Positions 7,816 to 28,500 of a stretch of DNA of 64,000 bases are shown in pieces. The notes under the pieces are model-generated. The model was not told where the DNA came from. It ran no database searches and saw only the letters and a program-made list of their open reading frames with translations. The stretch comes from Chrysemys picta bellii. Taxonomy: Eukaryota. Every line of letters begins with the position of its first letter. Position 1 is the first letter of the stretch. The stretch covers positions 8,680,001 through 8,744,000 of the forward strand of contig NC_088802.1 of NCBI RefSeq assembly GCF_011386835.1, in the 5' to 3' direction. Both the position numbers and the translations under genes were made by a program.

Positions 7816-8321
7816 GTTTCAACATAACCCCTGAGTTTGGACCTCCTCTCTCTTGTCTGTCTTATCTGGCTGTATTTGTAACTTACATTGGTTTCTATCC
7901 AGCTTCCATGCTCAGTAAAGCAGACGGTCTGCTTTGTCTCCCTCCTACTTTGGGATTTCACTGGTACCTTTTTTTAGACTTTCCAAAGGGAAGTGGGGGA
8001 GCATTCCTTTTGATCAGTTAATGTAATCTGATTTGTTATAACAGATGTGAAATGCTATCACTGGACTCCAAAGGTGCTGTACATAACCCACAAATCTGTT
8101 GTCAAGGATATTCTGGGGGTGGGAGGGGTGCGTGCATTTTCTCCAGCCACACACACCCCAAGTGTCTTGTTGGGCAGGGGAAAGGTAAAAAGTCTTGTAT
8201 TCAATTAATTTGCCACATTCCACAGTGCCATAGTTCCTGTACAATGTACTAGGAAAAGAAGTGATCATTAGGAAAAAAGGGAAGCCCTCATCAAAGGGAG
8301 GGGAACAGCCACAAATCACGG
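7816..8321 (+). other. PPP1R10: Candidate long 5'UTR exon of PPP1R10
   Basis: Acceptor TTTCTTTCTTTTTATAG|G at 7815/7816 and donor CGG|GTAAGC at 8321/8322. Human PPP1R10 is recalled to have a second, long non-coding exon. No transcript data available. Confidence 0.4.
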
Positions 8322-11300
8322 GTAAGCAAACCTTTCTGGTATTAATTACATTTCACAACCTTCATTTCTGTTCCAGACCACTTTGCTTATTTCTTTTTTG
8401 ATTCTTCTTCCATTGTCAACTCCGCGCAGTGACAGCAACTGATGCATGCAGAGGCTATAAGGATATTTTGAGTCTTGATTTAAGAGCTTGCCAATCTGTT
8501 AAGACAACTACAAATTTAATTTTTTGAGACTTTGCATTAGAGAGATCTGGTTTCTTTTACCAGAGCCAACCCATTGGATCTGCATGAGCGTCCGATAGCT
8601 TTTAACCAAGGAGAGGCTGCTTTTGTGACTGAGGTTTTTTTTTAACTGCTGGATTTTTTTCTGGACTGTTTCTAACATGAAATGGGACTTCACAAGGCAG
8701 ATTTTTCAAACCCAGCAGGTGAAATACCTGCTGCAGTGTCCAGTGGTAGCATTTCATGCAATGTAAAGCAATTCAGCATTTTAGTCTCATGGGGACTGAA
8801 CAATATACAGCCTGTAGTGGCCTGATCTTGAAGCATTGAGCTGCAATCCTGTTGAAGTCATTAAGAGTTGTCCTGGGTGCTAAGTTTCTCTCGGGCTTGG
8901 GTCTTAGCTGCTGTATGTATAGTGCAGGTAGGATGAGGTAAGTTGTATGCAAGCAGCAAATTTAGCAAAGGCCTTGTAGAGATTGTGCCAGATGGGTGGG
9001 TCCACTTAAGCCTGGCACGGTGGGACCATTCGCTGTGTTGCAGTTGTGTGCACTTCTAAATTTCCAAGCGCACAGAAGACTAATGGAGATGAAATATGCT
9101 AAATAAGGAAAATAACAAAAGATCCAGCCAGAGAGGTTGATGAAAGCAGCAATGGCTCTTGCAGCCTCTTAATAGGAATAGAAAATCTATTTAATTTTTC
9201 GAGAAAAACATTCAATGAGAGGAAAAAAAATGTTTAACCAAACACTAGGAAATAGACCAGAATCCATTCAGGCATTTAAATGGACAAAATCAATTACGTG
9301 AGGGTAAATGTGGGTGAACACACAGTGGGGACTGTCAGTCAGGTAATAGGCCTGCTAAAACTTTCTCTTGCCAGAAGCCTAAATGATTGTCAAACTAGAT
9401 GTTTATTCTGTGCAGCCAGTGATCTTTATCTAAAGAGAGATCAATAAGGGTTTGGCTAAAGATGGCTTTTAAAAGTATTTTAAATACCACACTTCTTAAA
9501 AAATCCCAATACATGAAGCTTTTGTACCTTAGTAGCTCTTGACAGGTGTTAAGAGCACCTGATGTTTACTGAAAAAGGAGTGCAGCTTCTGCTAACAGGA
9601 TTTTTGTTCTAGAAGTCCTCTGCTCCTGCTGTCTTTCTTCCCTCACCTTCCTGAAGTTATAATCTCATGGTCTCACTCCTGTGGGTGAAGATACGAGATG
9701 GGGTTGGAGAAGTAAGACACTGAGATGCTAAAGGGACAAAGATACTGTGCAGAAGCTGAACCCTTTGCTGTAGCCTAGTAACCATGACAGTCACTGGCAG
9801 GTTCTCTGTCGTATTTGAAGCCTCAGTTATGCTGAGACCATATGTGGACAACATATTGTAAAGATAACTTCTGACTTGAGGTAGCTTGGCCTCTTGGTGA
9901 AACTCAGTTTAGTGTTTTAGACCCCCAGGGAAAATAATTCAGGTGTGAAGAAATCAATAGGTCTCTGAACACATGGGGGTCCAAATATTTAAATTTAAAT
10001 ATCTGGCTGAATTTAATCTTGTTTTAACTCTGCTGTAGTCACTTCAGTGACTATTTTGTCCTTTCAAAGGGAAGGGGAGTAAGTACTGTGGTTTTTTAGA
10101 GAAAAACTAATCCTAGTTTCCTTGCCATAGGTGGAAGGGGAGGATTATCCTGTTAGAGCACAACGCTGGGAGTCAGGACTCCTGGTCTGTGCCTGGATTT
10201 GGGAAAGAGTGTAGATAGTGCCAGAGGATTTGGTGCTTGGGGCTCATGGGTCGGGTGTTTCTTTTGATGGGAGTGTGGTAGTTAGGAAAAGGGACGGGGG
10301 GTCTTTAGGAGTCCGGACTCCTGGATTCTAACCCTCTGGCACTGAAATGGAGACATAAGCAGATAAAGAAAAAGCCACTAGCTCATTTTCCCCTTCCCCA
10401 AAACTACTGGGGACTGAAGTGGGAAAACACCGTGAGGCTTACTTCGTTGTTGCTAGAGTGCTTTGAGAGCCTCAGAAGGTGTTACAGAAGGGTTATTCCA
10501 TCAGGATGGTTTTAATCATGATTTAACGAACAGCTGTTTTTGTAACATTACAGTAATTGGCAGTCCTCAGTCACTCCCCAGTGTTAGGGCTTAGAATACC
10601 AAGTCTTAAAAATCCTTTGTGATATATATTAATAGGATTATAGGCTATGAAGATGTCTGTCTTCATTGGAATAAAATCCTGATTTCTATCTCTAAACTGT
10701 AAGTACAAAACAACTCTCCCGGTGGTCTCCAGTCACATGGGATCTAACATCTCAGCTGTACTGGAACGCTACTTGCGGAGGGGTTTAAATCCTAATAGAT
10801 CAGTAGCTGTGCTTTGCTTGTGGTATGTCATCTGTCCTCTGTATCTTTCTATCCCATCCAGACCCTCAAGGCTCTCTATCTGTGCCATGTCCATAGCTGC
10901 TTGTAGCCCCTCTGGATACGCTTACTTCAGTAAATCCCATCACCCATAGCATTCAAAAATTGACCCAGTCTGTGCAGGATTCCTTTGTCTTTGGAGGCGG
11001 GAGCGCACAGCTGTCTTTCTCTTAAATTGGCACAGCCGTGTAGTTTTGATGCTCTTTACGTCAATACTGACTGGCTAGATCTTGGCAGTGGATAAATATA
11101 AGTTGCTCTGAAGAGAGTCCCTGTTGTATGACCCACTGCTTAAAATCTGCTCCCTATGTCCTCCTTGGCTTATTATTGCCCATAGGCGCTCTCATTAGCA
11201 CTGGGAGAAATTAACTAGATCCCTTGCAAAGGGGTGAACAACAATTTCAAATCTAACTGGATTAAAAACTTTTCCATCTTTTTCACTCTAGGCTCTCAAG

Positions 11301-12589
11301 AGATGGAGTTTAAAATACAAGGCTGAAATCGTAACATCTAAAAATGCCTTTATCTGTGTTTAACTTCAGCTCAAACCCAAAGGATATTTTGAAATCTGTC
11401 ATGGGAAAAAGTTTGGTTACTTCCTCTATCTCACAAAGGAGCAAGCTAGTTCATATTTTGTTTCTATTCAATTTCACTTCTGGTTCTCTGCCCTTAAAGC
11501 TGCGATGTTTGGGTTGCAAATTGGTGGTTGTTGCATTTTGCTGAACTTGTAAATTTTAGTCTGCTTAAAAAATGTCTTTGTTCTTGTATCCTTTTAAGTG
11601 ATAGTGAACCAGTTCAATGATTCATGTTCTAGGATAACTTTTCTTTTTTTTGGCTAAAGTGTGTACCTAATGCTGCTCTTCCCCCTTACCAGCTTGACCT
11701 GTAATGATTTTTTTTCAGAAGGAAGTAATCTATTGACACTCATACGTTGACTGTACCTTGTAAATGATCATGCTATTTGTGTATTTACAGAAACTGCCTT
11801 TAATGTTGGGTAGAAATATGTAAGAATATTGCTTAAAAGTTCACATCACTGGAAGCGTTTCTTGCACCATATAAACTGTAGGCCTGATGTTCAGACTCAC
11901 TGACTTCAGTTGGAATCCTAGATAGTCAGGATTTCTGAACATCCATATTAGGATTTGGCAATGGAAGCTGATATTTATCACACACTCGGTTCTGCAAATA
12001 CCACAAATTGGTTTCTGCCCTGCTTCAGGACTAGTTCAGCAAATGTTGTCGATGTTTTATTGTTCAACCAGGATTAGAATTAATGCTTGGGAGACTTAAG
12101 CCACTCACAGTTGAATCACTACTTTTTTTGGTTAAATTCAGAGTGCAGCTCTACTCAGAGAAGCAACTCTGTGAAAAGGCATTGTGTGGCTTTTTGTCCC
12201 TGAACTCTAGATCCTGTTTAGTCAACTGGCAAATAAAATTGGCTTTCTGCCAGCCCTGCAAATTCAGGCTGGGATTCAGTTGTTAAGTTAGGTTCAGTCT
12301 TGTTTTCATCAGGAATAGATTGTACAAATTAAGTTCTGCCTTCATTTAACCTGATTTCAGTAAGCTTACCCACATGTGACTGCAGTTACACTGCAACTCA
12401 TGGGTGAGCCTAAAATAGAATGTGGCACACTCCCTTAAAGCCTCTTTGGTTCTCTGGGGCTAACAGGGATCAAATGTGTTATTAAAGTTAGCAGATCTGA
12501 CTAATATACACACAGGAATCAGAGAAGATGCCTTTAGTCACTTTAAAGAGTAGGGCCATGCCTCAAAGGGTTTTAGACTAGATCACCCA

Positions 12590-12745
12590 TTTCTTTCAGT
12601 GGAGGTGAACACCTAACAGACATCCTAGCCAAATTCTTACCTGTTCAGTTATATTGTGCTTACCTTTGATTAGCATTGTGTGCCATAAACAGCTACAGTG
12701 CACCACCCCAGAGGTGACTGCATTTCAGGAGCTGGAGTGAAGTGA
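12590..12745 (+). mobile_element. AmnSINE1-like 3' fragment
   Basis: CATCCTAGCCAAATTC...AAACAGCT...CACCCCAGAGGTGACTGCATTTCAG. Confidence 0.55.
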
Positions 12746-13499
12746 CCGAGCTGTAGCTTGTTTTTTCTGGGTAGCCTGCTGTCTGAGAGCAATGTTTGTC
12801 TTAAGCCTGCTCCTTCCTATGTCTGGCAGTGGAGTCTAAAGTCAAGTTTGGTTATTTCCATGGCCAACAGCAGGCCAAATTTTCCAACCAAAAATTCCTT
12901 AATTGCAGAAAGCCTAATCTATTGCTCAGTGCCCAGAACATGTGCAGATCTGAGCATTCAAATGCAATGCTTAGTGTTACTTTTAAAAATAAGACACTAA
13001 TGCCAGAGTATGACTAATACCATAGGATCTGTTTGGGGCAATAGGATGAAAATGGTAACTAGGCAACCATTTTCCATTATGTAAATTTCATATGAGGCAT
13101 TTGTTCTCCATGAAGCAGGGGTATATTGACCACACAAGTTTTGGTTTCTCTTCAGCCATTGACACTGCTTTCAAATCAAATGCCCCCTGTTGGGGAGGAA
13201 TGGACGGAGACATGCTGCTCGTGATGTGAACTTCTAGGGTGCATGCAAAAGAGAGAAACTCTGGGCAAAGTCATGAACATTTTACCTGTTTTTCTAAAGC
13301 TTTGCCAGGGGTTTCTGCTAAAACCGTTGACCTAAGATTGCAATTTCCTCAAGATAACAATAGAAAAACTGTTTTCCTATAAAAGCAACTTAAAACTGTT
13401 CTTTAAAGTGTGTTTCTCTTCTGAAGCATATTTCTAAAATGGCATCTTGTCAAATCACAGATAATGCCTTTCTCATCTAGCGCTTTTCATCAGTAGATC

Positions 13500-13680
13500 T
13501 CAAGTGCTTCACAACATTCATAGTCTCTCAACACTTCTGTGAGGTAGAGCAGTGCTATTATCCCTGTTTTACACATGGAGCGTGAGGCCTAAAGTCACAC
13601 AGGAAATCTAGTGGAGTGGGGAATTGCACAGAATTGGGAACCTTAGGTACTAGTGCTCTAACACTGCACCCATGCGCCCA
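13500..13680 (-). mobile_element. MIR/CORE-SINE fragment
   Basis: GTGAGGTAG...TATTATCCCTGTTTACACATGGAG...AAAGTCACACAGGAA...GCTCTAACACTGCACC follows the reverse MIR layout. Confidence 0.55.
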
Positions 13681-14174
13681 TATTAAGATGTCTGATCGCA
13701 GAGCCAGATTTGTTGAGCTCTTGAGACTGAGGACAGAATCAGACCAGCAGAATCTCTCTAATGGAGATGCACAAGCGATTTTTAAAAAAAAAGTTGCTTA
13801 TCTGATCCTGGGTTGGGTTTGTAAGGAGCCAGGTAGCAAAAACCTTCCTACATGTATAACCTGACATGCTTGATTGTGGATCATGGACCCACACAATACC
13901 ATTTCATAGCAGCGTTCCACTCTGAAAAGCTGCTATTTCCTTTATATCTGGGCTGGTTGACGCTGCAATAATCCAGGTTCAGAGTTCGTAACTTTGACAT
14001 GTTGCTTCAAGCCCCTTCCAGTTGACTGTGGGTCAAGCTATTGGTCCAGAGAGTGGGATCAAACTAGACATGTAGTTGGCTAAAAGTGGACTTTAGTCTA
14101 AATTAGGCTTAAATGTGTAACTGAAACCTTAAATATGCTTTTTGATGTTTTCAGAGGTGAACTCAAAGGTCTTG

Positions 14175-22500: not shown

Positions 22501-25500
22501 CCCAGCAGCCCAACCCCACAGGTGGCATTTCTGTATTTCTCCACTGGGTGACCGATCCCAGCATAAAAATCCTTTGGGATCCTTGCAGATGAGGTACTAT
22601 GGAAATGTGTGGGGCTTATCCCCTTGCTGTATTCTGCTAACCTGAGCTCCGCTTTGCTGTAGGGTTGGAATTGGAGACTCCCTCACTGGTTCCTCTGAAG
22701 AAGAACCCCAACGCTGTAGTGGTGTCTGAAAAATACAACCTGAAGCCGATGCCGATAAAGAGACAGAGGTAGGTCTGAGCATCCCCCCCTGCTCTGGGGA
22801 AAGCGTCCAGACCTTGCGCCTGTGGCTTCCTCTGTCTGCCTCGCCTTTACACTCCGTTCCTCAGTCCTGAGAAGCACTCTGTGTGGAACTAGGAGGCAGG
22901 ACTCCTGGGCTCTATCCCTGGCTCTTGGGAGGGGAGTGGGGTCTAGTGTTTAGAGCGGTGGGGGCTGGGAGGCAGGACTGAGTGCTGATGGGATTTGCCC
23001 GAGGCCCTGTGTGTGGTACAGGCCCAGCATTGGTAACCTTCCCCAAGCCGCCCCTGCTTGCCCCTTCAGCCCCCTGCTAAGCAGCTCTAGGGTTGTGCTG
23101 TGCTTTGCTTTCTGTGCTCTTCATGCCATATCGCAATGTGATCTGGGCTTGCCTGCTCCTTGCTCAGGGCAGCATCTGATCCCTTTCCTGGGCCGTGGCC
23201 TCAGCGTCTCAGTACCATGTCTGCTTTTCCCTCTCACAGCACGTCCGCCCCCTCTGGAGACAATCCACCAGTAGAGAAGAAATACAAACCTCTGAACACC
23301 ACCCCCAACAGCACAAAGGAAATCAAAGTCAAGATCATCCCTGCGCAACGTGAGTACATTGAGGCCCCGATAGTCAGGATGCCTGGGTTCGGTCCTCAGC
23401 AGTGGGCGGGGAGTGGAGTCTAGTTGTTGAGAGTTGCAGGGGTGGGGCTGAGAGTCAGGGCTCCTGGGTTCTTATCCCTGGCTCTGGGAGGGGAGTTGGG
23501 GTGTAGCATGGCGGAGGGGCAGGATAACACATGAAGTTGCAGGTGCTTGGAGCTTTCAGTTTGCGTAACCTCTTTCATTCCCCCCTCTCTGCAGCAATGG
23601 AGGGCTTGGGCTTCCTCGATGCCCTTAACTCTGCCCCCATCCCGGGGATCAAGATCAAAAAGAAAAAGAAAGTCTTGTCTCCTACAGCAGCCAAGGTACA
23701 AACGCCTCAAGGTGGGGAATGGGGGCTGGTGGGTTAGAGTGGGGGGCTGGGAGGCAGGACCCCTGGGTTCTGATGTCAGCAATGAGAGGGGAGTGCGGTC
23801 TGGGGCAGGGGCTGGGAGTTACTGGTTCACTTCCCATTACACTGATCCCACACTTCTCTCTGTGTCCCAGGCGAGCCCGTTTGAAGGGAAGCCAGCACCA
23901 GAAGCGAGCACTGCTAAACCATCCTCACCAGAGCCCGCTACTGCATCCGAGCCGATGGAGGTGGATCGGCCCGGTACTCCTGTGCCGGCAGTAGAGGTCC
24001 CAGAGCTGATGGAGACCGGTAAGGATGGGGAAGGCGTTGGAGCCGACGGGTTCTATTGTGCTAACCCTGGGTGGGTGGTAGGTGTCAGCCCAACATCCTG
24101 GCTGTGTTGGATCAGACTTGATGTTGCCACCCAGGAGGCCATAAAACCCCATAATGCATGTGGCCAGATGTGCCATGCCAGCTAGGATACAGCTGCCTTG
24201 GCCGGGGTGGGGGTAGCCCCTGTGTCAGCTTAACTGTGGGGCTGGGAGGACTGTCTTCACTTGGGGGTCCTGGGTTGGGCTCAGGAGGCATTGGCGCCGG
24301 TTGTTAGATCCAGGCTCCGTGGGTGGGTGTTTGTCTGATCGCTGAGCCGCTCTGTGTCCCGTCCCCGCAGCCTCGTCCGAGCAGAACTCAGACGCCAAGC
24401 CGTCCGAGAGCGCCGCTGACTCCACGCGGCTCACCAAGAAGGGCAAGAAGAAGAAGACAGTGACTTGGCCTGAAGAGAGCAAGCTGCGGGAGTACTTCTA
24501 CTTCGAGCTGGACGAGACTGAGCGAGGTGAGTACTGGGGTGGGGGCCTTTCTCTCTGGGGTCACCCGCTCCCACCCGGCACTTGGGGTATGGGACATGGG
24601 GCCTTTCCCTCTGGGGGTGCCTGCTCTGCTCCAGCACCAGGGGACTACCTGGCTTCTGCAGGTGGGAAAAGGGATACAAGGCCTTTGAACTCCTATTATG
24701 GAGTGGGGGTGTCGCACCCTTCCCATCGGCTGGACGGCAGAGGCCTGTCTGTCCCCTGACTAAACCCCTCCCCGTTTCTTCTCCTCCCCTGGCAGTCAAC
24801 GTGAACAAGATCAAGGACTTTGGCGAGGCAGCCAAGCGGGAGATGCTGAAGGACCGGCACGCCTTTGAGACGGCGCGTCGGCTCAGCCACGATGCCATGG
24901 AAGAGAAGGTGCCCTGGGTTTACCCCAAGCTCATCGACCTGCCTAGCCCCCTGGTGCAGCCGGGCAGCGGCAGCCGCGAGAAGTTCACCCAGGCCGAGAG
25001 GGAGAAGGGCATCCTGCAGGAGATCTTCCTCTCCAAGGAGAGGTGGGTGTGGCCCTGGGGGGCAGGGCGAGGGGTTGGAAGAGTACTGGGGGTTCAGGCT
25101 GGGGCACCATTTCCCAGTTGCGCAATGTAGGCTCTTTGTCCCCCCCTCTAATGGCTGCACTGTGCAACAGCCAGTGTGTTAAATTTAAGGCTGCCTACCT
25201 GAATCCAGCATGGCTCTGTCCCTCTCTAGCGGCATATGAGCCGGTTGCTGCCTCTGAACCTGTCGACCTGGTTGTTCGACTGTTTTCAGCTCCAGAGGTC
25301 CCAGCAGATGACCCCACCAGGGGCCTCTCCAGGTTGCTGGGCACCAGGATGCCCCTCTGACCCTTCTGTCTTTGCTTCCCATGGCTGGTAGATGCTGGGT
25401 GGGTGTGTGGACCAGGCCTGTGAGGCCGTGCTGGGAGCTAAGGGGTGGGGGAGTGGGGAGGCATTAGGCTGTGCTGAGAGCCCCATCAATGGGGGGCTAT

Positions 25501-28500
25501 GACCACATGTCTCGGTGCTGATTTGTGACCAGCATCTCTCCTCTCCGCAGCGTTCCAGACAGTCCCCACGAACCCGACCCGGAGTCTTACGAACCCCTGC
25601 CGCCCAAACTCATCCCACTCGACGAGGTACGTCTGGCTCAGGGCCCCGGGTTCTCTACCCTGCTTTGGGGGACAGAAGGAAGGGGCCTGTTGGGGTAGAG
25701 CAGGGGGATTGGTAGTCAGGACTCCTGGGTTCACTCCTCACTGTGGAAGGGGTCTAGGGGTTAGAGCAGAGGGTTCATTTCCCAGCTCCCTGGGGACCCC
25801 TCCCCGCTCTGTGTGTCTCTGTCTCCCCTGTATAAACAGGGATGGGCTAGAGAGAGGCAAAGGCCCGGGAACCTGAGTGCCCAGCCGCGACCCCCAGCCC
25901 CTGAGGCTGGGGCGTCCTCCCTGCCCTCAGCCCATCCTGACTCCAGTGTCTCCTCTGTCCCCTCTCTCAGGAATGCACCATGGACGAGGCCGCCTACCAG
26001 GAAGGACTCGACCCGGCCGCCGCCTCGCAGTCTCCCGACGGAGCCGGGGCCTCCAAGCTGCCCCCAGTGCTGGCCAACCTGATGGGGAGCATGGGGGCCG
26101 GCAAGAGCCCTCAGGGCCCCAACCCCAGCTCCTCCATGAACGTGCAGGAGATCCTCACCTCCATCATGGTAATTGGAGCTGCTGCGTAGCCTGACTGACC
26201 CTATAGGCTCCCCGTAGTGGGAGGGTCCAGCACCAAAAGGGTAAACGCTGCACTGCCCTGTGGGTGGGGCCTCCTTGGCCCATCTTCCCCCAGAGCAGAC
26301 CATCACTTCCCCCCCTGCCACCCCACCACTGCTGGAGCGGACCATTGGCCTGCCTCCAGCTTGGTTGAAGGTCCAGCATTTTAGCGGGAAGGGGAAACTC
26401 GGACAGTGCACCAGCTGAGGAATAGTTGGGGTGGGGGGATGCATGGGAGAGTGGGACTCTTTCCCATCACTCCATTCCCCCAAAGCGGTTGGGTCAAGCC
26501 AGCCCCTGGCCCCAGCTAGAGGGGTTAGTGGACTAGCACAGCGCCCTAGAGTTAGAGGTCAGAGAGAGCTGAGGGGGTGTAGTGTGAGTGGGGGAGAGGA
26601 GGGACACTGTCTAACCCTGCTCCGCCTCCCCCCTCTTCCCTACACAGGGCGGGCCCAACAACCACAAGACGGAGGAGCTAATGAAGCAGCCGGATTACTC
26701 GGACAAGATCAAACACTTGCTTGGCAACCTCCAGACACAGCCCCCAGGGCCCTCAGGAGGTAAGAGACCTGTGGGGGGCACTGACCCTGTTCCCACCTCC
26801 CGCTCCTAGGAGAAAATCATGTCCTGCCGGTCGCCTTCTGGGTTCTGTTTCTTTGCCTTGTCTGTCTGTCTTGATGGGGCGCCTGGGACTTAGAACCATC
26901 TGCTCCTTCAGCTCTAGGGGCTCTGGCAGGCAGGTAATCCGAAGGACGTGACCTTGCTCGGTTCGAAAGGCTGGGGCCAGGGGAGAGCTGGTGCACCCAG
27001 CATCTTGATGACATCGTGGGTGTGCGAGTGCATGTCTGTGTGATTTCCTGCTCTGGGGGTTCCAGGAGAGGTGGCCATGTCAACATATTCTGGGTTAGGA
27101 TCGGAGGTTGCTGTGAAGGGATGGGAAGTGGATCCCCCTATTCCTCTCTTTCTCCTCCTCTTCCCCCCCCCCCCCATTGTAACCCCGTTGGCTGTATTTG
27201 ACCCCTCTGCTCTCTTGTCTTCCAGTGCCCCACGGGCTGCTGGGCCCAGGGCCTCTCGCCAATGGATTCCCACCTGGACCAAAGAACATGCAGCATTTCC
27301 CTCCCGGGGGGCCAGGACCTATGCCTGGTAAGCAGGGAGCTACCATCTTCTGGGGGTGGGGCGGGACTGTCAGACTTTCAGCTGGAGTGTGCCAGAGTCA
27401 GTAGGGCCTGCTAACCCCAGTGCAGTGCTAGGAGGTGCTGTGTTGCGGGGAGTGGGGTAGAGGCTCAGTATGGGACACTGCCCTGGCAGTCAGTGCTGGC
27501 GCCAATTCCCCAGTGCGGTGCTAGGGGGCGCTGTGCTGCAGGATGGGGGGGCTCAGTAAGGGGCACTGTGTGTCATGGAGCAGGGTGGGCGTTCGGCAGC
27601 AGGTGTTTTTCTGCCCTGCGTGCTCAGACAAGGGGTCTCTAACCTTTGTGCCTCTCTCTCTCCCCTAGGTCCCCATGGTGGCCCTGGGGGTCCCAACATG
27701 CCCCCAGGTCCCGGCATGCCTGGCGGGCCCAGGATGATGGGTCCTCCCCCTCCCCAGCGAGGCGAGTTCTGGGATCCCCCTGACGGCGGCATGCGGGGAA
27801 ACCCCCACGGGGGTATGCGAGGGGGTGGCCCTGGCCCGGGGCCTGGCCCAGGCCCTTTCCACCGGGGGCGAGGCGGAGAGCCCCCCTTCCGAGGGCGAGG
27901 AGGAGGTGGGCGCAGTGGCGGCCCCCCCAATGGCAGAGGCGGGCCCCCTAACAACGGCATGGGTGGAGGAGGTGGCCACGGCGGTGGCGGCCACGGCGGA
28001 GGTCACGGCGGCCATGGTGGAGGCCACGGCAGGGGCCACGGCGGCCATGGTGGAGGCCACGGAGGCGGCGGCGGCCATGGTGGAGGCCACGGAGGCGGCG
28101 GTCATGGCGGTGGCCACGGAGGAGATCACGGCAGAGGCCACCCAGGGGATCATGGCCGGGGTCATGGTGGAGGCCACGGAGGAGGTAATTGCAGGGGGCT
28201 TGGCATGCCCTCTAGGGGGAGCAGAGGGCCATGGCTTTGGAATGGCCCTGCCCCTATGTGGGAGGGGCCTGTGAGTGCTCCCTCCCCTCCCCCGTTTTTA
28301 TCCAGCAGGTGGCGAGGGCCAATGGGGGAGACCCAGCATGCATTGCACCCATTCGATCCTGCGGGCCCTGCTCCTTGGGGGCGGGGCCCAGAGCGGCAGA
28401 GACCCCCTATGGGCCTGTGAGAACAAGGGAGACGGTTTCAGCTGCAGCATTGCATGCTGGGAGCTGTAGTCTGCTCTTGGTGGCGCAAGTGGAGCATTGC

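What the first reader, a model, noticed from the sequence alone, without database searches (positions are those of the whole stretch)
23871..23994. Internal 3' splice site exactly 61 nt into PPP1R10 exon 12: the lncRNA-PNUTS switch may exist in reptiles
Seen in sequence: the exon starts at 23871 and contains CCATCCTCACCAG|AGC with AG at 23930-23931. Using it removes exactly 61 nt, shifts the frame after codon 316, adds [20 protein letters not shown] and stops at TAG 23992-23994, before the PP1-binding motif. Recalled knowledge, to be verified: human lncRNA-PNUTS arises from an hnRNP E1-controlled alternative acceptor that deletes 61 nt from the 5' end of exon 12. The AG needs the Pro codon to be CCA, so it is not forced by the protein. 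Inference: an mRNA-to-non-coding/NMD switch that is at least amniote-old.
Basis: partly seen in the sequence, partly recalled or inferred. Interest (0 to 1): 0.75.

Follow-up and report, generated by a model that had tools for sequence, protein, structure and literature searches.

The report
Latent splice acceptor inside turtle PPP1R10
The turtle PPP1R10 (PNUTS) gene carries, at the same codon, the AG that mammals appear to use to turn this mRNA into a non-coding RNA, but the turtle site is weaker, most birds sampled have lost it, and no turtle RNA assembly shows it in use.

Summary
Exon 12 of PPP1R10 starts at 23871 and an AG sits at 23930-23931. Using it would remove 61 nt, shift the frame after codon 316 and stop at TAG 23992-23994, upstream of the PP1 motif TVTW (24457-24468).

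The AG lies at the same codon boundary (Pro|Glu of the conserved KPSSPEP) as the best cryptic acceptor of rat and bat exon 12, so positional homology with the mammalian lncRNA-PNUTS site is likely. The figure "61 nt" could not be confirmed in the papers held.

Evidence that the turtle uses the site is missing:
- Four RNA-like contig assemblies from three studies show only the canonical 23695>23871 joint. Contigs cannot exclude a rare isoform.
- Rat and bat have 11 uninterrupted pyrimidines with CCCC before the AG. Turtle, snake and birds have runs of at most 5.
- A crude acceptor score gives 4.3-4.5 in mammals and 0.4 in the turtle.
- Three of four birds read CCG, so they have no AG. All five non-avian amniotes read CCA, a weak signal (p about 0.06-0.16).

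Best reading: an inherited, latent acceptor, a by-product of a conserved protein motif, that placental mammals later strengthened. A regulated reptile switch remains possible (about 12%).

The parts
23595..23695 (+). PPP1R10 exon 11 (9th coding exon); ends on the complete codon AAG, which is codon 316
   Evidence: Joints 23349>23595 and 23695>23871 in RNA contigs; sequence; gene model
23696..23870 (+). Intron 11, 175 nt, GT..AG, containing a repeat fragment at about 23720-23769
   Evidence: contigs from elsewhere in the genome match 23742-23769
23871..24018 (+). PPP1R10 exon 12 (10th coding exon), 148 nt, starts in phase 0, encodes ASPFEGK...KPSSPEP...ELMET
23910..23929 (+). Tract upstream of the internal AG: 12 of 18 pyrimidines at -20..-3, longest run 5, A at -5 and -11, no run of three or more C
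   Evidence: rat and bat have 11 uninterrupted pyrimidines ending in CCCC
23930..23931 (+). Internal AG at exon offsets +60/+61 (A of Pro CCA, G of Glu GAG); a latent acceptor and positional homologue of the +61 site in rat and bat
23992..23994 (+). TAG reached in the shifted frame, 63 nt after the putative alternative junction and 24 nt before the end of exon 12
24371..24526 (+). Exon 13, carrying the PP1-binding motif TVTW at 24457-24468

Best explanation
The AG at 23930-23931 is ordinary coding sequence. It is the junction of a Pro CCA codon and a Glu GAG codon inside the strongly conserved motif KPSSPEP. From general knowledge, this motif is a proline-directed phosphorylation site.

The CCA codon, and so the AG, was probably already present in the amniote ancestor. 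This makes the turtle AG the positional homologue of the alternative acceptor that placental mammals appear to use to make lncRNA-PNUTS.

In the turtle it is only a latent or cryptic acceptor. Its pyrimidine tract is broken by two A's, it has no C-run for a poly(C)-binding protein, and it scores below nearly all real acceptors of the gene. No assembled transcript uses it.

The strong, hnRNP E1-maskable site looks like a later refinement in the mammalian line. Two synonymous positions, CCA to CCT at -11 and TCA to TCC at -5, turn CCAUCCUCACCAG into CCUUCCUCCCCAG.

Shown: the sequence, the positional homology, the weaker context, the loss in birds, and canonical splicing in the RNA assemblies. 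Inferred: the ancestral state, the lack of regulated use in the turtle, and the order of events.
For: Protein constraint: KPSSPE(P) is conserved from fish to mammals, so the G and most of the tract follow from the protein.

Codon at the Pro: CCA in rat cDNA (L001; its protein is 100% identical to Rattus), Myotis, Pseudonaja, the window, Platysternon and Alectura. CCG in Probosciger, Aphelocoma and Eudromia.

Tract: the longest pyrimidine run before the AG is 11, including CCCC, in rat and bat. It is 5 in all seven sauropsids, and the turtles and the snake have no C-run there.

Acceptor PWM (built from 99 PPP1R10 acceptors, scored leave-one-species-out):
- Bat +61 site 4.3, against 4.4 for its canonical site; 2nd of 207 exonic AGs.
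- Rat 4.5.
- Window 0.4, against 2.7 canonical; 16th of 203 exonic AGs, and below 13 of 15 real acceptors.
- Platysternon 0.5, snake -2.7, Alectura -1.4.

RNA: four assemblies from three studies show only canonical joints around exon 12, although contigs as shallow as 2.6x (intron 12) were kept next to exon contigs at about 120x.

No excess of miR-205 seed matches in the turtle: 2 six-mers against 1.8 expected, and none in the 1.5 kb after the CDS.
Against: - All five non-avian amniotes sampled keep the A. Only 5 of 37 comparable four-fold sites are identical across these five taxa.
- Gene-wide, only 6 of 252 four-fold sites read A in bat, snake and turtle together, and 4 of 65 among sites followed by G. 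This is a weak hint of constraint (p about 0.02-0.16, depending on the null).
- Alectura keeps CCA although only 1 of its 22 Pro codons followed by G is CCA.
- The +61 AG is the best-scoring of the 17 AGs within turtle exon 12, and it is only about 2 bits below the modest canonical acceptor.
- Contig assemblies drop rare, NMD-sensitive isoforms, so the RNA test has low power.
- The PWM is crude, built from 99 partly orthologous sites.
- Only two placental mammals were sampled, and no crocodilian, lizard, marsupial or monotreme.
Confidence: 0.6

Rival explanations
1. The internal AG is a regulated alternative acceptor in turtles too. Using it produces an NMD-targeted or non-coding PPP1R10 transcript, so the coding/non-coding switch predates the split of mammals and reptiles.
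For: - Exact positional homology with the +61 site of rat and bat.
- CCA is retained in mammals, snake, two turtles and a megapode.
- It is the best internal AG of turtle exon 12.
- The shifted frame stops before the PP1 motif in every species with the AG, far upstream of the last exon junction, as NMD requires.
Against: - No alternative joint in four RNA assemblies.
- Interrupted pyrimidine tract and no C-run for hnRNP E1.
- PWM score about 4 bits below the mammalian site.
- The AG is lost in three of four birds.
- No miR-205 seed excess.
- No stable local RNA structure: z from -0.36 to +1.47. The same holds in mammals, so this test does not discriminate.
Confidence: 0.12
2. The site is used, but only as unregulated splicing noise. 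A small fraction of transcripts pick the internal AG and are removed by NMD, with no biological role. The conserved A reflects inheritance, CpG avoidance (CCC|G and CCG both create a CpG) or an exonic splicing signal.
For: - The site is in the top 8% of exonic AGs and lies 61 nt from a canonical acceptor of modest score.
- At four-fold sites followed by G, C is rare in bat, rat and snake (0.06-0.12) and G is also reduced, leaving mostly A and T.
- Neighbouring synonymous sites (TTT, GAA, GGG at codons 4-6) are also shared by the non-avian taxa.
Against: No junction was observed at all. CpG avoidance is weak in the turtle gene itself, where the four bases are about equal before G.
Confidence: 0.25

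Closest known systems
lncRNA-PNUTS: hnRNP E1 (PCBP1)-controlled alternative 3' splice site in exon 12 of human and mouse PPP1R10 (Grelet et al. 2017, as described in PMC6824538, PMC8005942, PMC11369213)
   Same: Same gene and same exon. The AG is at the same Pro|Glu codon boundary as the best internal acceptor of rat and bat (+61). Use shifts the frame and gives a premature stop before the PP1-binding motif.
   Different: In the turtle the tract before the AG is interrupted (longest pyrimidine run 5 against 11) and has no C-run. The acceptor score is about 4 bits lower. No transcript with the junction was seen, there is no excess of miR-205 seeds, and the stop falls within exon 12 (63 nt after the junction) rather than in exon 13 (150-153 nt in bat and rat). 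hnRNP E1 binding and TGF-beta control were not tested.
Regulated unproductive splicing coupled to NMD (AS-NMD), in general
   Same: A frame-shifting alternative acceptor with a premature stop many exon junctions upstream of the normal stop would make an NMD substrate.
   Different: Functional AS-NMD events usually show strong nucleotide conservation of the alternative site. Here the AG is lost in three of four birds and the conservation signal elsewhere is weak.
Cryptic exonic 3' splice sites (decoy AGs)
   Same: An AG preceded by a moderately pyrimidine-rich stretch that arises from Pro and Ser codons, one of 203 exonic AGs in the gene, with no evidence of use.
   Different: This one is the positional homologue of a site that is genuinely used in mammals.

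Membership tests
lncRNA-PNUTS-type alternative acceptor of PPP1R10 exon 12 | An AG inside the 5' part of exon 12, at the position used in mammals | tested here: met
   AG at 23930-23931, which is +60/+61. Rat cDNA and Myotis have CCAG ending at +61 at the same Pro|Glu boundary, and it is their best internal acceptor. The published number of nucleotides removed could not be checked.
lncRNA-PNUTS-type alternative acceptor of PPP1R10 exon 12 | Use changes the reading frame and creates a premature stop before the PP1-binding region | tested here: met
   61 nt removed; the tail is 20 residues, then TAG at 23992-23994. TVTW is at 24457-24468.
lncRNA-PNUTS-type alternative acceptor of PPP1R10 exon 12 | Transcripts with the alternative junction exist | tested here: inconclusive
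   Four RNA-like Logan contig sets from three studies show only 23695>23871 and no 23695>23932. Contigs cannot show rare isoforms, and no raw-read run was available.
lncRNA-PNUTS-type alternative acceptor of PPP1R10 exon 12 | A C-rich or BAT-like element over the site that hnRNP E1 can bind and mask | tested here: not met
   By sequence only: there is no run of three or more C in the 25 nt before the turtle AG, whereas rat and bat have CCCC within an 11-nt pyrimidine run. No stable stem-loop in any species. Actual binding cannot be tested with these tools.
lncRNA-PNUTS-type alternative acceptor of PPP1R10 exon 12 | The transcript carries miR-205 sites (sponge function) | tested here: not met
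   Turtle CDS has 2 six-mer seed matches against 1.8 expected, and none in the 1.5 kb after the CDS. Bat has 5 against 2.2. The seed was taken from memory, and the published sites may be non-canonical.
lncRNA-PNUTS-type alternative acceptor of PPP1R10 exon 12 | The switch responds to TGF-beta and hnRNP E1 phosphorylation | not testable with these tools
   Needs cell experiments.
Conserved AS-NMD event | The nucleotides of the alternative site are conserved beyond what the protein requires | tested here: inconclusive
   CCA in 5 of 5 non-avian amniotes and 1 of 4 birds. Empirical nulls are 5/37, 40/252, 6/252 and 4/65. The -5 and -11 tract positions differ between mammals and sauropsids.

The most novel reading that the evidence does not exclude
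The +61 AG of PPP1R10 exon 12 is an ancestral amniote AS-NMD site that reptiles still use at a low or condition-specific level. The well-known mammalian mRNA-to-lncRNA switch was then made by strengthening its pyrimidine tract and placing it under PCBP1 control.
Probability: 0.13. Interest if true: 0.55.

Novelty: new member of a known kind. Interest (0 to 1): 0.3.

Why it matters
If reptiles used this site, a coding/non-coding switch described only in human and mouse cancer and EMT models would be an old, physiological autoregulatory device of a core PP1 and transcription-termination factor. That would change how lncRNA-PNUTS is viewed.

The present data support a more modest point. The raw material, an AG created by a conserved Ser-Pro-Glu motif with a CCA codon, is old. 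The features that make it a strong, maskable acceptor are seen only in the two placental mammals sampled. This gives a simple, testable example of how two synonymous changes can turn a latent exonic AG into a regulated splice switch.

Tried and rejected
- Literature check of '61 nt'. The primary paper (doi 10.1038/ncb3595, PMC5578890) is not held. Six reviews confirm an alternative 3' splice site at the 5' end of exon 12 with a frame change and premature stop, but none gives the number. A phrase search for '61 nt/bp/nucleotides' with PNUTS found nothing relevant.
- Structure. Seventy-nucleotide windows around the site in turtle, rat, bat, snake and jay fold no better than shuffles. This does not discriminate, because the mammals fail too.
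- Five of the twelve contig look-ups gave no usable exon 12 DNA or were not followed up. P0025, P0091, P0126 and P0135 were not on record, probably because only the longest isoform is indexed. As a result no lizard or marsupial DNA was obtained, and no crocodilian appeared in the hit lists shown (the last list gave only the best 120 of 370 hits).
- Unlabelled Logan mammal contigs (P0058, P0075) were not fetched, to avoid a possibly human contig.
- A branch-point search by eye found only a 4/5 match (CTAAA) 14 nt from the turtle AG and none in mammals, so no conclusion was drawn.

Full report
**Observation.**
- Exon 11 ends at 23695 (…GCCAAG|GT) and the canonical acceptor AG is at 23869-23870. 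Exon 12 begins at 23871.
- CCATCCTCACCAG|AGC places an AG at 23930-23931, 61 nt into the exon. The A is the wobble base of Pro CCA and the G is the first base of Glu GAG.
- From 23932 the shifted frame reads [20 protein letters not shown] and stops at TAG 23992-23994. The normal frame reads ASPFEGK…KPSSPEP…ELMET.
- The gene model built from the Chrysemys protein P0132, together with the RNA joints, gives 948 nt of CDS before exon 12.
- The PP1 motif TVTW lies at 24457-24468 in exon 13.
- Exon 12 ends at 24018 (148 nt), as the joint 24018>24371 shows.
- The exon is the tenth coding exon. 'Exon 12' holds only if there are two 5'-UTR exons as in the human numbering, which I did not check.

**Is it more than chance?** In one species, no.
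- Exon 12 has 17 AGs and the modelled CDS has 203 internal AGs.
- The motif KPSSPE(P) is conserved from fish to mammals. The G, and most of the C/T-rich stretch (Pro and Ser codons), therefore follow from the protein.
- Only the wobble base of the Pro codon is free. In this turtle gene 9 of 36 Pro codons followed by G are CCA.

**Literature.** Reviews confirm the mammalian event. PPP1R10 gives lncRNA-PNUTS through an alternative 3' splice site at the 5' end of exon 12. This changes the frame and creates a premature stop. hnRNP E1 masks the site by binding a BAT-like element on it (PMC6824538, PMC6888083, PMC11369213, PMC8005942). The primary paper is not held, and the figure '61 nt' was found nowhere.

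**RNA evidence in the turtle.** No run on record as RNA was found, and all runs are kept as Logan contigs. I laid four RNA-like contig sets (X1 and X4 from one study, X5, X6) on 23100-25100.
- The only joints around exon 12 are the canonical ones: 23349>23595, 23695>23871 (a joint in X1 and X4; a fitting loose end in X5), 24018>24371 and 24526>24796.
- No 23695>23932 joint appears.
- Contigs as shallow as 2.6x (intron 12 in X5) were kept beside exon contigs at about 120x. Even so, a short alternative-junction branch can be lost in assembly, and the isoform would be an NMD target. This is a weak negative.

**Comparative DNA.** Word searches with exon 12, and then with longer hits, returned PPP1R10 from turtles, squamates, birds, mammals, frogs and fish. 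I obtained exon 12 DNA for eight further taxa.

The Pro|Glu boundary reads as follows:

| Taxon | Locus | Pro-Glu codons |
|---|---|---|
| Rat transcript contig (protein 100% Rattus) | L001 | CCA GAG |
| Myotis davidii | L008 | CCA GAG |
| Pseudonaja | L007 | CCA GAG |
| The window | – | CCA GAG |
| Alectura | L004 | CCA GAG |
| Platysternon | L002 | CCA GAA |
| Probosciger | L003 | CCG GAG |
| Aphelocoma | L006 | CCG GAG |
| Eudromia | L005 | CCG GAG |

- The turtle AG is therefore the positional homologue of the rat and bat CCAG at +61.
- In the bat, +61 is the best of all AGs in exon 12 and the second best of 207 exonic AGs in the gene, and it scores as high as the canonical acceptor. This fits +61 being the published site.
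- Three of four birds have lost the AG. These bird genes have GC3 of 0.83-0.97 and almost no CCA anywhere.

**Strength of the site.**
- Rat and bat have AAACCTTC(C/T)TCCCCAG: 11 uninterrupted pyrimidines ending in CCCC.
- Turtle and snake have A at -5 (codon TCA) and at -11 (codon CCA). No sauropsid has a run longer than 5, and the turtles and the snake have no C-run of three or more before the AG.
- A log-odds matrix from 99 PPP1R10 acceptors, scored leave-one-species-out, gives 4.3 (bat) and 4.5 (rat), against 0.4 (window), 0.5 (Platysternon), -2.7 (snake) and -1.4 (Alectura).
- In the turtle the site ranks 16th of 203 exonic AGs and lies below 13 of 15 modelled real acceptors. It is still the best AG within exon 12, and it is only about 2 bits below the modest canonical site.
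- The matrix is crude, so these numbers rank sites and do not predict use.

**Synonymous conservation.**
- Of 37 four-fold sites with an invariant residue in exons 11-14, only 5 are identical in rat, bat, snake and both turtles. The Pro site is one of them and the only one with A.
- Gene-wide for bat, snake and turtle, 40 of 252 four-fold sites are identical, 6 of 252 are A in all three, and 4 of 65 among sites followed by G.
- The site is thus more conserved than average, at roughly p = 0.02-0.16 depending on the null, for a single pre-specified site.
- Part of this can be mutational. Before a G, both CCC and CCG create a CpG, and C is strongly depleted there in bat, rat and snake.
- The neighbouring codons TTT, GAA and GGG are also shared by the non-avian taxa.

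**Other tests.**
- No window of 70 nt around the site folds better than shuffles in any species.
- miR-205 seed matches are not enriched in the turtle (seed taken from memory).
- The shifted frame stops 63 nt after the junction in the turtles, 6 nt in the snake, 78 nt in Alectura and 150-153 nt in bat and rat. In every case this is far upstream of the last exon junction, so NMD would be expected (established rule).

**Conclusion.** The AG is probably ancestral to amniotes. What is missing is any sign that it is used or regulated in the turtle, and the features that make it strong and maskable in mammals are absent from all seven sauropsids.
- I rate 'latent acceptor, by-product of the conserved Ser-Pro-Glu motif, strengthened later in the mammalian line' at 0.6.
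- I rate unregulated noise-level use at 0.25.

**Limits.**
- Only two placental mammals were sampled.
- No crocodilian, lizard, marsupial or monotreme DNA was obtained, because four look-ups failed on isoform ids.
- No raw reads were available.

Noticed in passing
window 24019-24370 and 24527-24795: Introns 12 and 13 are covered by low-depth contigs in the RNA-like assemblies (X1 14.5x and 12.6x; X4 25.8x; X5 2.6x), against exon contigs at 70-190x. Introns 10 and 11 are not covered apart from repeat pieces. This could be selective intron retention or pre-mRNA. Read-through of intron 12 stops at 24183-24185, also before the PP1 motif.
   Followed up: partly
proteins P0001, P0144, P0169-P0172, P0002, P0011, P0012, P0039, P0044 (other turtle loci): Turtles carry PPP1R10-like paralogues. 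Several are fused to a KRAB box: PF01352 on the Chrysemys, Malaclemys and Pangshura entries, and a KRAB-like N-terminus on the Terrapene entry P0001. The sea-turtle copies look degenerate. All keep KPSSPEP.
   Followed up: no
window about 23480-23500 and about 23720-23769: Introns 10 and 11 each hold a fragment of the same interspersed repeat. Contigs from elsewhere in the genome match both places and create spurious 'joints' such as 23500>23740.
   Followed up: no
window 23910, 23933, 23978: Run X5 carries a second haplotype of exon 12: 23910 A>G (Thr to Ala), 23933 G>A (synonymous Glu, as in Platysternon) and 23978 T>C. Neither base of the AG at 23930-23931 varies.
   Followed up: no
window about 27581-27668: A strong acceptor-like site (a long CT-rich tract followed by TAG|GTC, with the AG ending at 27668) lies inside what the Chrysemys protein model P0132 treats as an exon starting at 27581. 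The model may start the Gly-rich exon too early.
   Followed up: no
L008 (Myotis) 12259-13850; L005 (Eudromia) 8129-9171: Intron 11 is 175 nt in the turtle and 93-166 nt in snake, Platysternon and the two birds with short introns, 482 nt in Aphelocoma, but 1.6 kb in the bat and 1.0 kb in the tinamou.
   Followed up: no
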